From NCBI GenBank assembly GCA_033442325.1, contig JAWQFM010000028.1:453450-517449 (forward strand): a DNA stretch of 64,000 nucleotides. Direction: 5' to 3'. Source of the stretch: Salpingoeca rosetta. Lineage: Eukaryota > Protista > Choanoflagellata. The position numbers and the translations under genes were made by a program. The notes beneath the pieces are model-generated. The model did no database searches and was not told where the DNA came from. It saw nothing but the letters and a program-made list of their open reading frames with translations. Of the stretch, positions 3,067-64,000 are shown one piece after another; position 1 is the stretch's first letter, and every line of letters starts with the position of its first letter.

Positions 3067-4156
3067 ATGGAGGACAGCCAGCGTCATCCAAGACGCTCAA
3101 CGAGGCTGCGAGCAGCAGCAGAAGCAGCAGCAGCAACAGCTGCCAAGAAGAGCACTGATGTGCCTGCCCGGGCCACTTCACAACGAGTGCAGCCCAAGAA
3201 AAGTGTGCGAGGGAGAGGAAAGACCTCGAGACAAGGGAAGCGCAGGAAGGATCAGACAGAGGAAGATGGCAAGAGGCAAGGAAACACACCCTCCAAGACC
3301 ACCAGCAAGAGGAGCAAGTCGATGGCCACGCATTCATCAACCATTGGCGACCCTTTGGAAGAGGACGACGGCAAACAAGTGAGTGCACAAGTGTGGATGT
3401 GTGGATGTGTGTGTGTATGTGTGTGTGGCAGCATGCGTTGATGAGGTTTATCTTTCTCTTGCCATGCACACACATCGCACGTCGCGCACGCATGCCATCA
3501 TGACTTGCCTTGGTTTGCAGAGGTGCTGGAGTTCGTGGTCCAGCTTGTCACGACATTACCATGACAACGTGTGGGGTCGACCCGTCACTGACGATAGCCG
3601 CGAACTCTTTGCCTGGCTCTGTCTTGAGGTGTGCGCGCGTATGTATGTGTATATGTGTTTTTGTGTTTGTGCGTGTGTGTGTATGTGTGTATATGTGTAT
3701 GTGTGTTTTTTTTTTTTGTATGTGTGCATGTGTATATGTGTGCGTGTGTGTATCCTCGTGTGAACGACTCTGCATCTGTCTATGATTGTGTGGGATGGCA
3801 TCCTTTCCTGTGAACTCGCACCAAGCCTACACCGCCTCCCCAGCCTACATCCAGCTCGTGCACGAAAAACTCTCAAGCCACGCTGCGTGCGGTTGCTGGT
3901 ACACAGATGATGGCCTGTGGGTTAACGTGGAGGACAGTGCTCACCAAAGAAGCAGGGCTACGGGATGCGTTTCTCAACTTTGATATTCACCACTGCGCAT
4001 CCCTTTCAGACGTGCGTGTGCATGTGCATGATGTACATGTGCGTTAGAACTGCACTTGCGTCTCTGCAAAGCACACTCTGTCAACTTCCCGTTCACGTGT
4101 GTCTGTGTGACTGTCTCACGTGTCTCCCTCTGTCTGTCTGTCTGTCTGTCTCTCCC

Positions 4157-4206
<50 letters not shown>

Positions 4207-4708
4207 GCTCTCTCTCTCTCTTTCTCCCTCTCGCTCTCTCTCTTTCTGTCTCTCGCTCTCTCTCACTCTCTTTCTCTCTCCCTCTCTCACTCTGTCTCAC
4301 TCTCAGGCTGCCATTTCGAAGTTGTTGGAGGACGAGCGAATCATCCGCAATCGCGCGAAAGTGCACGCCATTCGACACAATGCAAAGTACGCCGGCGAGC
4401 GGCGCTGCTGCAAGTTGCCTGATTCCTGTGAACACACACGCACATACATGACATCACCCACGCTGTTTGTTTGCTGGTTGTTGTTGTTTGGCTGCAGTCT
4501 CGCGTGCTTGGCATCGTTTACGTCTCATTCCACTTTGCCGACTTGCTGCGCTTCAGGCTCGTGCGTGAAATGGAGCAGCAGCGCGCAGGTGTGCATGTGT
4601 ACATGTTGTTGTGTGTGCTTTGTGAATGCGTTTGTGGTTGCGTGTGGTGTGTTCAAAGTGGAGTCGCGCATGTGAACCTGATACACACACAAACACACAC
4701 AAACGCAT

Positions 4709-59469: not shown

Positions 59470-59979
59470 TCACTCACTCACTCACTCACACACACACATA
59501 CACATACACACCTTGAGTCTCTGTTTGTGGCCATTGACAACTCGATCACGTGCACCACGGCCCATGCACATTAACTTGCCAAACTCACTGCCTGCGCTCA
59601 CCAACATCTCCTCTCGTGCCCCCCCCCCTTTTTTTTTGTTGCTTGCTTGCATGCATGATCAGTGCCGCAGTTTAGTGCGGATGTGCTGCCGCCTCTTGTT
59701 CCCGGCAGCGCGCCGTCACGCCTGCCAGAGATCTTCAAGGCGTTTAACCCGGACGGTACGCGCACAACACGTGAAGGTGGTAATGGTGGTGGTAGTGGTG
59801 GTGGCGACAGCAGCAGGGATGAGCGTGGCGGGGCAAGGAGGGACGCGATGGCGGCAAGCGTGGGTGTGCTTCACACGCGCACATGCTTTCACAAGGACAT
59901 ACAGACTTGCAAGCACGCAAGCACGCGCTTCCTATCCTCTTCTCTGTGATACATGCTCTCAACCCTCCTCCCCCAAACC

Positions 59980-60060
<81 letters not shown>

Positions 60061-61095
60061 TCATTTCCTGGTGCTTGTGCAGACATGGTTCGGGAGAGGT
60101 CACGGGACCCATGCGTGGTGGACTGCATCCCCCTGGACGGCTCGCTGGGCATGCGTGGGTTCACCATGTTGGTGCTGCCACCGCTGATTCTCAAGCGAGA
60201 CAGCCCGGCACAGGAAACCGCACGCACAGGACAGCAACCACCAGTAACAACGAGAGCAGCATTTGCTGCCAGGACGGCAACGTCGGCAGCAACGCCTGCA
60301 ACAACAGCCACAGCAGTCACAACGGCCACACCTGCAGCCACAGCAGGAGGAGAGAACGCTGAGGTGTCTGGGCCGACGAGTGCTGAGCTTGAGGATGAAG
60401 AGGCGGCACTGCGGCGAGCGCTTCGGTGTGCGCTTCGGTTTCGCAGCAAGATTGGCATGCCACCCAGTAGCACCTTGCCCGCCATGGACGACGATGATGA
60501 CGACGACGGCAATGATGCGGGTGGTGCTGGTGCTGGTGCTGCTGATTATTTTTATGACTACACGCTTTACTGGACCAGTGACACTTCTACGCCCGACTCA
60601 TATTCGAACAGGCCGTCCGACGAAGGGGACAGCGCCCATGGCGATGACGATGGCGATGATGATGGTGATGGTGATGGTGATGGTGATGGTGATGGTGGGT
60701 CAGCTCGCAACCCCTCCTCGTCCCCGCCATCCAAAGCCGCGGGCACCCCTTCAACATCAAGGGCAGCAGCAACAACAGCAACAACAACAGCTACTACAAC
60801 AACAGCTGCGATGGCTTCATCTTCGACAGCGGCATCAGCCAGCACGCGCCGCCCACAGCAGCATCACGCTGGCGATGGTGATGGCGGGGCAGGGGAGCTC
60901 ATGGCAACGCACGGGCTGCACACCATTGCACTCGCAGCAGAGGCGCACGCACGGCAGCATCAGCAGCAACAAAGCGGTGCTCGCGAGGATGATGATCATG
61001 GTGATGATGGCGATGGGGATGACGATGATGACGACGACGACGACGATGGTGACGAGCCTCGTTCAAAGCGAAGCAAGCGCGGCGAGAGGGGCTGA
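56903..61095 (+). CDS. F-box protein with ankyrin-like repeats and acidic low-complexity C-terminus
   Basis: Spliced F-box LFTLPQEVIHAY|VFPHLEAHDIQHLRRTCRAMRSIV. Ankyrin-like helices TLIQAAWVGDQDLC, ALTYACLGRHTDVIDEIL, LFSIAFRMGSPRVM. Last exon ends EPRSKRSKRGERG* at 61095. Confidence 0.7.
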
Positions 61096-61419
61096 GGTGG
61101 TGATCAGAAGCGAAGAAGATGCCTTGGACTCGTGTGGCTGGGCGGATGGTGCTACGTTTGAGCACGTGTGCCACGATGTGTAATTGGACCTGTCCTTGCT
61201 TGCGTGTGTGCTCACGACGCGATGTGTTTGCTTGTTTGACTTTACATTGTGTGTATGAGTGTACGTGTGTGGACCAAAGTAAAAGAGGTTGAGAAGAAAA
61301 GCGAGCGCTGTAAGAGGGAAGGAGAGGCAACCAGGCAAGCAGCAAGCGAGTGGCAAGGGAAGGGAAGGCACAAGGGAGAAGGAGACGGGAGGGATGAAGA
61401 CGAACAACAGCAACAACAA

Positions 61420-61482
<63 letters not shown>

Positions 61483-61860
61483 ACCACAGCATTCCGACCG
61501 TTTTTCCCCCACGTCCACAACAGACAACGAAACAGGTTCGTGCCCCCACCCACGACCTTGCTTGCTGTTGTGTTTGATTGCTGTGGTGGGGTGTTCCAAA
61601 CATAGCTGGTGTGCGTTGGCGTGTTGGCGTGTTGGCGTGTGACGACAGCTCTTGTGCCGTGGTGTCTGCACGCATCGAAGCAGCACATACATCCTCCCGT
61701 CTCTCCAACAAAGGGAGCACACCAACGTCTTCACCACCGCTCATCGCCATCATCACATGCATCATCATCATTCACGCAACAACACACCTTCATCATCACC
61801 ACACCGGGCTGCGTCGTCAGCGTGCATGCACAAAGCGACGGACCAGCACAGTTGACCACA

Positions 61861-62548
61861 ATGCCTTCTGTCCACCACATCCTGACGACGCTGAATGCGC
61901 CGTTGGATGAGGAGCAGCTATGGGCGCTTGCGTTGCTGCTGGGCGCGCACATGGATGCCCTGAAACCGTCTTTCCCAGACCTGAGCGATCCGCAGCACCT
62001 CACCTTCCTCATCAACGCCAACACCGCCATCATCGAGCCGTCCGGCCACGTCACCTTGGACATGTCCACCCTTGGTGTGTTCGCTGTGTGTGTGTGTGTG
62101 TGTGTGTGTACCTGTGTGTATGTGTACCTGTGTGTTTGTATGTACCTGCGTGTGTATGTGTACCTGTGTGTTTGTATGTACCTGCGTGTGTGTGTGTACC
62201 TGTGTGTGTGTACCTGTGTGCGTGTGTGTATGTACTGTGTGTGTGTGTCTGTGTGTGTCTGTGTGTGTCTGTGTGTGTCCTTGCACGTCCGCAGCCTTGC
62301 AGGATGTCACCTCACGTGTTCACACGCTTCAATCCGCCATCCAGGCAACGAAGATCAAACACTCCCGTTCCTGGCAGACGAGGTCAAGGAGCGACAGCCC
62401 TCCACTGACCTGGAAAAGGTGCCCACGTGTGCTTCATGCGCGTGCATGCGTGCGTTTGCATATCTGCACCAAGCACATGTCCGTTCCGACACCGCAACGC
62501 GCCGTTCACGTGATCGCAATCATTCTGTTCTGTATGCATATCTGCGTG

Positions 62549-62633
<85 letters not shown>

Positions 62634-62789
62634 GCGCACGTGTTCAGCATTGGCGCGCTTCTGTTCACGGCTGCCGACTTTTCACTCATGGAGGACGAAG
62701 AGCCATCGCTCAGCGAGGGTACGCCGCATAGTTGTGTGCGCGCGTCCTAGAAGAGACATGTGTGCAATTGTGTGCTCGTGCCCTGGCGG

Positions 62790-62832
<43 letters not shown>

Positions 62833-63182
62833 TGCATGCGTGTGTGTGTGATGGCGAGCATATTTGCATGTGTCGCTGATTGGTGATGCTGCTTGCTTGT
62901 TGCCGCTGCAGATCTTGAGGCATTGATCACCCAGATGACTGACGAATGCATGGAGGACAGACACACACTCGAGGCGGCCATCCAGGTGTGTGCGTGTGCT
63001 GTATGTGTTGTGTGTGTACTGTGTGCGTGTGTGTGTGTGCGTTGAGTGTGTATGTGTGTGCGCGTACCCAGCTGCTTGTAGTTCTTGCACAAGAACTGCT
63101 CATACCCGTTGCATGTGGGACTCGCTCCTCTGCACATGCACGTATACATGTACACCCTGCGTGTCGATGTTTCTCATCGCGT

Positions 63183-63250
<68 letters not shown>

Positions 63251-63432
63251 GTGGTTGCCAGGCGTGCCGCGCGCATGTGGAGGACAATGAAGCCGTTGAA
63301 GTGTTGAAGGACCTTGTTGCACTCGCCATCAGCATTGAGAAGGCGGTGCGTCGCATGTCTTGACATGTTCGTGACTGGTCGCACGGAATGAAATGGTTCA
63401 CCTCCCGGCCTTTGTACTCCCCTTGGCAGGCA

Positions 63433-63483
<51 letters not shown>

Positions 63484-63766
63484 CCTGTGCGTGCCTGAAC
63501 AGGACGGGCAAATACCGGCCGAGCTGCTGAGCGGGCGAGCAACAACATCGAGCTCACCTGACAGCGGATATACACAGGACGCGACGGCCTTTGACGAGAC
63601 ACGAGACCTGCACGCATCACTCATGAGGGAGATCCAGGCCAAGCCAGACCTCAAGGATGTACGCGCAGCTCCCCTGTTTTGTCACGAGTGATCTAGTGAG
63701 GGGTGGTGGTGGTGGTGGTGGTGGTGGTGGCGGTGGCGATGTTTGATTGGTGGGTGCCAGTCTTTC

Positions 63767-63838
<72 letters not shown>

Positions 63839-64000
63839 ACACACCTCACACACACACACGCGCGCGCGCGCACTCACTCACATCACTCACACACGCGCAC
63901 ACACACACACATGACACACCTCACACGCACACATCACTCCCCCTTGTCGCCATCGCGATGACTTGGCCCTGCAGGGGTCGAAGCGTGCGTTGACGGGGCC
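61861..64000 (+). CDS. KIND-domain protein with downstream WH2-like motif (Spire-like); truncated by window edge
   Basis: Exons 61861-62074, 62345-62418, 62634-62718, 62912-62985, 63262-63345, 63503-63658, 63975- are in phase. KIND motifs SVHHILTTLNAPLDEEQLWAL and AHVFSIGALLFTAADFSLMEDEEPSLSEDLEALITQMTDE. WH2-like RDLHASLMREIQAKPDLKD. Confidence 0.8.

What the first reader, a model, noticed from the sequence alone, without database searches (positions are those of the whole stretch)
61861..64000. KIND + WH2 protein: candidate pre-animal Spire-like actin nucleator
Seen in sequence: an N-terminal KIND domain across 5 exons, followed by RDLHASLMREIQAKPDLKD(G), which resembles Spire WH2 repeats (LHxxLMxEI...LKxV). 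Established: KIND followed by WH2 repeats is the hallmark of Spire, which cooperates with Fmn/Cappuccino formins and is generally regarded as metazoan. KIND also occurs in PTPN13, FRMPD2 and KNDC1, so the domain alone is not diagnostic. Only one WH2-like motif is visible before the window ends.
Basis: partly seen in the sequence, partly recalled or inferred. Interest (0 to 1): 0.74.

Follow-up and report, generated by a model that had tools for sequence, protein, structure and literature searches.

The report
Known choanoflagellate SPIRE actin nucleator gene
The stretch is the first half of the Salpingoeca rosetta SPIRE gene, a true pre-animal Spire actin nucleator, but it was already published and tested in 2019 and 2024, so the reading is right and not new.

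Summary
Window 61861-64000 carries exons 1-6, plus the first 26 bases of exon 7, of an 11-exon gene. Every exon translation maps without a mismatch onto one 683-aa database protein, Salpingoeca rosetta PTSG_08818 (XP_004990203.1, F2UKS8). That protein is publicly annotated only as "hypothetical" or "KIND domain-containing".

The whole protein passes the Pfam KIND cut-off (E 2e-12). Its best solved-structure matches are the human SPIRE1 KIND domain and the Drosophila Spire tandem WH2. Just past the window end lie:
- a second WH2
- a block conserved among choanoflagellates at residues 372-405
- a Spir-box
- an eight-cysteine modified FYVE finger

There is no FERM, PDZ, PTP or RasGEF domain. So this is a full Spire orthologue, present as a single locus in this genome.

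It is not new. Kollmar et al. 2024 (Commun Biol 7:832; preprint 2019) showed SPIRE throughout Holozoa. They cloned a 683-aa Sr-SPIRE, mapped its myosin-5 binding with fragments cut at residues 372, 384, 401, 405 and 406, and imaged it in live S. rosetta. For the Monosiga protein they showed actin nucleation and FMN, RAB8 and MYO5 binding.

The parts
61861..62074 (+). Exon 1: start codon and residues 1-71, plus the first base of codon 72. This is the N-terminal part of the KIND domain.
   Evidence: exact match to P0001 residues 1-71. Pfam KIND covers residues 4-140.
62345..62418 (+). Exon 2: residues 72-96, KIND.
   Evidence: residues 73-96 match exactly. The short acceptor at 62345 is the one used in the annotated 683-aa protein.
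62634..62718 (+). Exon 3: residues 97-125. This is the best-conserved KIND stretch and includes the acidic run DEEPSLSED.
   Evidence: it aligns to human SPIRE1 KIND (3R7G, 2YLE).
62912..62985 (+). Exon 4: residues 125-149, KIND.
63262..63345 (+). Exon 5: residues 150-177, the end of the KIND region.
   Evidence: The region is colinear with the Hartaetosiga balthica transcript orthologue.
63503..63658 (+). Exon 6: residues 178-229. It holds a linker and the first WH2 motif (residues 211-229, window 63602-63658).
63975..64000 (+). Start of exon 7. The whole exon is L003:2175-2684, residues 230-399. It carries the inter-WH2 linker, the second WH2 (residues 245-263) and the start of the myosin-5 binding block (residues 372-405). 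The later exons lie beyond the window: exon 8 L003:2981-3414; exon 9 L003:3583-3631 and exon 10 L003:3814-3852 (Spir-box, residues 545-573); exon 11 L003:4156-4485 plus TAA (modified FYVE, Cys 583-671).

Best explanation
This is the 5' half of the single SPIRE gene of the choanoflagellate Salpingoeca rosetta (PTSG_08818, 683 aa). The protein has the full Spire layout: an N-terminal KIND domain, two adjacent WH2 actin-monomer-binding motifs joined by a short conserved linker, a central basic and hydrophobic block that binds the globular tail of myosin-5, then a Spir-box helix and a modified FYVE zinc finger. The most likely working model has three steps. The C-terminal module places the protein on RAB8-positive vesicle membranes. 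The WH2 pair lines up actin monomers to seed filaments. The KIND domain hands the new filament to an FMN-type formin by binding that formin's C-terminal tail, while myosin-5 bound to the central block moves the vesicle along these filaments. What I showed here is the gene structure, the protein identity, the domain order and the single copy number. What others have shown is: nucleation and FMN, RAB8 and MYO5 binding for the Monosiga orthologue, and MYO5 binding and vesicular co-localisation for the S. rosetta protein. What remains inferred is actin nucleation and formin binding by the S. rosetta protein itself.
For: All 11 exon translations map exactly onto P0001 residues 1-683. P0001 is XP_004990203.1 / PTSG_08818 / F2UKS8 of S. 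rosetta. The genome is 55.4 Mb.

Domain evidence:
- Pfam KIND scores E 2.1e-12, above the cut-off.
- In the PDB sequence search the best hits are SPIRE1 KIND (3R7G, 2YLE) and Drosophila Spire WH2 (3UE5). With a three-species choanoflagellate profile these improve to E 1.8e-9 and 1e-4.
- BLASTP against salmon-louse SPIR gives 4e-13 and 6e-10 for the Spir-box plus FYVE, and 2e-5 and 3e-4 for the tandem WH2.
- Eight Cys plus H553, I554, T589 and F591 are invariant across seven Spire C-termini.
- The AF2 model of the C-terminus has its best fold matches in the melanophilin Slp-homology domain bound to Rab27B, the RIM2 zinc finger and FYVE domains. These are weak, Z 4.0-4.7.
- All genome matches to P0001 lie in C28:515310-519734, so there is one locus.

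Literature: Kollmar et al. 2024 (PMC11231147) used Sr-SPIRE constructs of aa 2-683, 269-683, 2-371, 2-401, 2-405, 372-683, 384-683 and 406-683. These borders frame our conserved block at 372-405 and the end of the WH2 pair at residue 268. The same paper reports the biochemistry and live imaging.
Against: Exon-by-exon scans are nearly blank. The Pfam WH2, FYVE and FYVE_2 models stay below their cut-offs, although a named metazoan SPIR behaves the same way. Fold matches for the C-terminal module are weak: Foldseek E is above 0.1, VIA Z is below 5, and only one of five AF2 models was confident. The paper gives no accession for Sr-SPIRE. Its identity with PTSG_08818 rests on species, the length of 683 aa, the construct borders and the single locus.
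Confidence: 0.96

Rival explanations
1. It is another kind of KIND protein: a PTPN13/FRMPD2-like scaffold (KIND-FERM-PDZ) or a KNDC1-like RasGEF. On this reading the WH2-like motif is a chance resemblance.
For: KIND alone is not diagnostic. The Pfam WH2 model does not reach its cut-off.
Against: The whole 683-aa protein shows no FERM, PDZ, PTP or RasGEF match. Downstream lie a second WH2, a Spir-box and a modified FYVE that align to named Spire proteins.
Confidence: 0.01
2. It is only a SPIRE-like protein (KIND plus WH2, as in Physarum or the second Amoebidium gene). The Spir-box-FYVE exons would then be a separate downstream gene fused by the gene model.
For: I obtained no RNA reads across the junctions.
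Against: A complete transcript-derived ORF from Hartaetosiga balthica (P0003) and an ENA protein (P0009) are colinear with P0001 from KIND to FYVE, and run across every exon junction. All phases and GT-AG sites fit. The published full-length Sr-SPIRE is also 683 aa.
Confidence: 0.02
3. The locus is a decayed or silent copy, and the functional SPIRE lies elsewhere in the genome.
For: None beyond the lack of read evidence here.
Against: The reading frame is intact over 11 exons. No other locus in G000 matches P0001 at E of 0.01 or better. The motifs are conserved against distant orthologues.
Confidence: 0.01

Closest known systems
Sr-SPIRE of Kollmar et al. 2024 (Commun Biol 7:832, PMC11231147; preprint bioRxiv 10.1101/591974, 2019)
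   Same: Same species, same length (683 aa) and same domain order. The construct borders at 268/269, 371/372, 384, 401, 405 and 406 fall on the motif borders seen here. There is one locus in the genome. I take it to be the same protein.
   Different: Nothing detectable. The paper prints no accession, so sequence identity could not be checked letter by letter. Public databases still name the protein 'hypothetical' or 'KIND domain-containing'.
Mb-SPIRE of Monosiga brevicollis (same paper)
   Same: A choanoflagellate SPIRE with KIND, two WH2, a divergent myosin-5 binding motif and FYVE_2. It has been shown to nucleate actin weakly, to bind the FMN tail, RAB8 and MYO5, and to rescue melanosome transport.
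   Different: It is a different species and sequence. The nucleation and FMN-binding assays were done on Mb-SPIRE, not on the S. rosetta protein.
Metazoan Spire (Drosophila Spire, human SPIRE1 and SPIRE2)
   Same: KIND (PDB 2YLE, 3R7G), tandem WH2 with a conserved linker (PDB 3UE5, 3MN7), a Spir-box, and an eight-Cys modified FYVE with a serine-rich loop before the last Cys pair.
   Different: The S. rosetta protein has two WH2 motifs instead of the three or four typical of vertebrates. Its WH2 tails read LKDG and LNKT rather than LKK[AV]-like. Its central myosin-5 motif has little sequence likeness to the vertebrate GTBM. It has no C-terminal extension after the FYVE.
SPIRE-like protein of Physarum polycephalum (armadillo repeats-KIND-2xWH2)
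   Same: A KIND domain followed by two WH2 motifs.
   Different: The Physarum protein lacks the GTBM, Spir-box and FYVE_2 and has an N-terminal armadillo extension (paper). The gene here has the full C-terminal module and no extension.

Membership tests
SPIRE actin nucleators | N-terminal KIND domain (kinase non-catalytic C-lobe) | tested here: met
   Pfam PF16474 scores E 2.1e-12, 47.7 bits against a cut-off of 26.7, over residues 4-140. The best PDB sequence hits are human SPIRE1 KIND (3R7G, 2YLE), at E 1.3e-3 for the single sequence and 1.8e-9 for the choanoflagellate profile.
SPIRE actin nucleators | Two or more WH2 motifs in tandem directly after KIND | tested here: met
   The two motifs are at residues 211-229 and 245-263. 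The pair plus its linker aligns to Drosophila Spire tandem WH2 chains 3UE5 and 3MN7 at E 1e-4 and to louse SPIR at 2e-5 and 3e-4. It is conserved in three choanoflagellates. Caveat: Pfam WH2 reaches only E 0.096, on motif 2. The same model finds none in a named metazoan SPIR.
SPIRE actin nucleators | Central myosin-5 globular-tail binding motif (GTBM) | not testable with these tools
   The block at residues 372-405 is the best-conserved stretch of the middle region in three choanoflagellates. The published Sr-SPIRE pulldown fragments are cut at 372, 384, 401, 405 and 406. Binding itself is a bench result from the paper.
SPIRE actin nucleators | Spir-box helix immediately before the zinc finger | tested here: met
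   Residues 545-573 align to the louse SPIR Spir-box within BLASTP hits of 4e-13 and 6e-10. H553 and I554 are invariant in seven sequences. AF2 predicts helices at residues 548-578 with pLDDT 85-92.
SPIRE actin nucleators | Modified FYVE zinc finger: eight Cys, without the R(R/K)HHCR phosphoinositide pocket | tested here: met
   All eight Cys (583, 586, 600, 603, 608, 611, 668, 671) are invariant. The position of RHHCR in ZFYVE26 and Hrs is occupied by TRGRECP. Pfam FYVE is sub-threshold at E 5e-4, 20.6 bits, as it is in louse SPIR. The top fold matches are melanophilin SHD, RIM2 zinc finger and FYVE domains, but they are weak at Z 4.0-4.7.
SPIRE actin nucleators | Partner FMN-subgroup formin with a C-terminal FSI tail in the same genome | not tested
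   At least seven FH2 loci exist in G000. I could not tell which one carries an FSI tail. The literature reports one FMN-subtype formin in S. rosetta (PMC5628938) and Mb-FMN tail binding to Mb-SPIRE KIND-WH2.
SPIRE actin nucleators | Actin nucleation activity | not testable with these tools
   It has been shown for Mb-SPIRE KIND-WH2, which is about 20-fold weaker than mouse SPIRE1. It has not been reported for the S. rosetta protein.
PTPN13 / FRMPD2 / KNDC1 (other KIND proteins) | FERM, PDZ and PTP domains, or a second KIND plus RasGEF, after the KIND domain | tested here: not met
   No such Pfam family matches P0001 at E of 1 or better.

The most novel reading that the evidence does not exclude
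The S. rosetta protein itself has never been assayed for actin nucleation or formin binding, so it could behave differently from the Monosiga one. For example, its WH2 pair plus linker aligns best with the linker-joined pair crystallised from Drosophila Spire. From memory, unverified, that pair is the nucleation-critical C-D unit. The paper instead assigns the Monosiga pair to WH2-A and WH2-D. If that difference is real, choanoflagellates would have kept different subsets of an ancestral four-WH2 array with different activities. The paper already proposes this idea in outline.
Probability: 0.1. Interest if true: 0.25.

Novelty: already known. Interest (0 to 1): 0.1.

Why it matters
A Spire orthologue in a choanoflagellate shows that vesicle-based actin nucleation coupled to myosin-5 and Rab GTPases predates animals. 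That conclusion is already in print and has experimental support. The residual value here has three parts. It confirms that the first-stage reader recovered a real multi-exon gene and its function from raw sequence. It gives the exact exon map on this assembly. And it points out that the public records (XP_004990203.1, F2UKS8) still carry an uninformative name.

Tried and rejected
**Exon-by-exon scans.** Pfam scans gave only KIND at E 0.079 on exon 3 and FYVE at E 2.7e-4 on exon 11. Exon-by-exon PDB searches gave nothing relevant. The exons are too short to carry the signal alone.

**Joined exons.** I did not build or submit a joined exon translation. The full-length protein I used (P0001) is a database record returned. 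The exons were only compared with it piece by piece.

**Genome-wide KIND scan.** It was blank even for this gene, so it says nothing about other KIND genes.

**Reads.** No reads were laid. The fact that several runs hold about half of the locus's words would fit exon-only transcript contigs, but I could not check this.

**FSI tail.** I fetched seven FH2 loci and listed their open frames. Without a reference FSI sequence I could not pick out the tail.

**Fold searches.** Foldseek on the C-terminal model gave no match at E of 0.001 or better.

**Costly search and earlier notes.** I skipped search for homologous proteins as unnecessary. The search of earlier findings returned nothing that bears on this locus.

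Full report
**Where the window lies.** The window is G000:C28:453450-517449 on the plus strand of a 55.4-Mb, 68-contig genome. I fetched the next 8 kb as L003 (C28:515250-525249). L003 position p equals window position 61800+p, and the overlap with the window is identical.

**Observation.** Reading the DNA gives an 11-exon GT-AG gene that starts at the ATG at window 61861.
- Exons 1-6 lie in the window: 61861-62074, 62345-62418, 62634-62718, 62912-62985, 63262-63345 and 63503-63658.
- Exon 7 starts at 63975 and runs to L003:2684.
- Exons 8-11 are L003:2981-3414, 3583-3631, 3814-3852 and 4156-4485, followed by TAA.

That step is left out. On their own the exons carry almost no signal: KIND at E 0.079 on exon 3, FYVE at E 2.7e-4 on exon 11, and nothing useful in the PDB.

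**Identity.** A search of the 1.84-billion-protein representative library with exon 11 alone returned a 683-aa protein, P0001, 100% identical over its residues 574-683. Every exon translation occurs exactly, and in order, in P0001. Together they cover residues 1-683 apart from the three codons split by introns. P0001 is EGD77727.1 / XP_004990203.1 / UniRef F2UKS8, "hypothetical protein PTSG_08818" or "KIND domain-containing protein" of Salpingoeca rosetta ATCC 50818. Searching the genome with P0001 finds only this locus, C28:515310-519734, so the gene is single copy.

**Domains.**
- *KIND.* On the whole protein Pfam KIND scores E 2.1e-12, 47.7 bits against a cut-off of 26.7, over residues 4-140. 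No FERM, PDZ, PTP or RasGEF domain appears. The best solved-structure matches by sequence are the human SPIRE1 KIND domain (3R7G, 2YLE) and a Drosophila Spire tandem WH2 peptide (3UE5).
- *Orthologues.* The same library search gave two orthologues: P0003, a complete transcript ORF of Hartaetosiga balthica, and P0009, an unnamed ENA protein. Both are colinear with P0001 from KIND to zinc finger. A profile of the three raises the PDB matches to E 1.8e-9 for SPIRE1 KIND and 1e-4 for the Drosophila Spire WH2 chains 3UE5 and 3MN7.
The second, residues 245-263, begins about 20 bases past the window end. The linker between them (DGSKRALTGPAPY) is conserved in choanoflagellates and aligns with the Drosophila linker.
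- *WH2 control.* The Pfam WH2 model gives only E 0.096, on the second motif. A salmon-louse protein named SPIR (P0011) gets no Pfam WH2 hit at all, and its FYVE and FYVE_2 scores are also below cut-off. So these blanks reflect the models, not the protein. BLASTP of P0001 against that SPIR aligns the WH2 pair twice (2e-5 and 3e-4) and the Spir-box plus zinc finger at 6e-10, or 4e-13 against the isoform P0007.

**C-terminal module.** In an alignment of seven Spire C-termini, all eight cysteines and H553, I554, T589 and F591 are invariant. The serine-rich loop before the last Cys pair is also present in the animal proteins. Where canonical FYVE domains carry RRHHCR, this protein has TRGRECP. This is the "modified FYVE" of Spire. 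An AF2 model built from that alignment is moderate. The best model has mean pLDDT 69, the ordered parts score 80-92, and the other four models were poor. Foldseek found nothing significant. An exhaustive VIA-align search ranked the melanophilin Slp-homology domain bound to Rab27B first (Z 4.7), followed by the RIM2 zinc finger and several FYVE domains (Z 4.0-4.3). That is the expected family, but the scores are too low to count as more than consistent.

**Literature.** A full-text search found Kollmar et al. [quoted passage not shown] These papers report the following:
- SPIRE occurs throughout Holozoa, with two or three WH2 motifs in choanoflagellates and ichthyosporeans.
- Monosiga SPIRE KIND-WH2 nucleates actin, about 20-fold more weakly than mouse SPIRE1.
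- It binds the FMN formin tail, RAB8 and MYO5, and it rescues melanosome transport.
- Sr-SPIRE binds Sr-MYO5 and co-localises with it on vesicles in live S. rosetta.

The supplementary construct table lists Sr-SPIRE as aa 2-683. The KIND-WH2 deletion starts at residue 269, and the mapping fragments are cut at 371/372, 384, 401, 405 and 406. In P0001 the WH2 pair ends just before residue 269. Residues 372-405 are exactly the conserved basic and hydrophobic block that runs from RKKRMPVRL to KLAFA. The paper prints no accession. Given the species, the length, the borders and the single locus, I equate Sr-SPIRE with PTSG_08818.

**Formin partner.** The genome holds at least seven FH2 loci. I could not identify an FSI tail from six-frame listings without a reference sequence. 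Pruyne 2017 (PMC5628938) assigns one FMN-subtype formin to S. rosetta. This point therefore rests on the literature, not on a test here.

**Reads.** Public runs of the same organism hold the locus. I worked beside that place and sent none of its letters to any search tool afterwards. Support for the splice model therefore comes from three things: the exact match to the annotated protein, colinearity with a transcript-derived orthologue across every junction, and the published 683-aa clone.

**Verdict.** The finding is nevertheless already known and experimentally characterised, so novelty is nil and interest is low. What is shown here is gene structure, identity, domain order and copy number. 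What others have shown is the biochemistry and localisation. What remains inferred for this particular protein is nucleation and formin binding.

Noticed in passing
window 62080-62270, 62555-62632, 62795-62850, 63186-63247, 63436-63482, 63766-63930; L003:2806-2900, 3415-3510, 3700-3750, 4050-4151: Each of the ten introns of this gene carries a long dinucleotide microsatellite, (GT)n, (CA)n or (CT)n, often 50-100 bases long. They make up much of the intron length and are what tripped the read-laying tool.
   Followed up: no
window 61395-61483: A (CAA)n tract of about 90 bases lies roughly 380 bases upstream of the SPIRE start codon, in the presumed 5' UTR or promoter region.
   Followed up: no
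window 59953-61095 (+): An open frame upstream ends in a long Asp/Gly-rich acidic tail. It is probably the last exon of the neighbouring gene. The part from 60400 to 61092 has no Pfam match.
   Followed up: partly
L003:5293-6062 and beyond (G000:C28:520542 onward, past the window end): The next gene downstream is CCDC81-like. Two consecutive exons match adjacent parts (positions 24-43 and 44-88) of Pfam HU-CCDC81_euk_1, at E 0.035 and 3.8e-5.
   Followed up: partly
P0001 (XP_004990203.1, F2UKS8): Public records still name the protein 'hypothetical protein' or 'KIND domain-containing protein', although it was published as Sr-SPIRE. The annotation lags behind the literature.
   Followed up: yes
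P0009 (784 aa, ENA contig of 3691 bases) and P0002 (92 aa, ENA): Two unnamed environmental or assembly proteins are choanoflagellate-type SPIRE relatives. P0009 is full length, with large Gln/Glu and Gly insertions in and after KIND. P0002 is a C-terminal fragment 58% identical to the S. rosetta zinc finger, so a fairly close relative exists in public data.
   Followed up: partly
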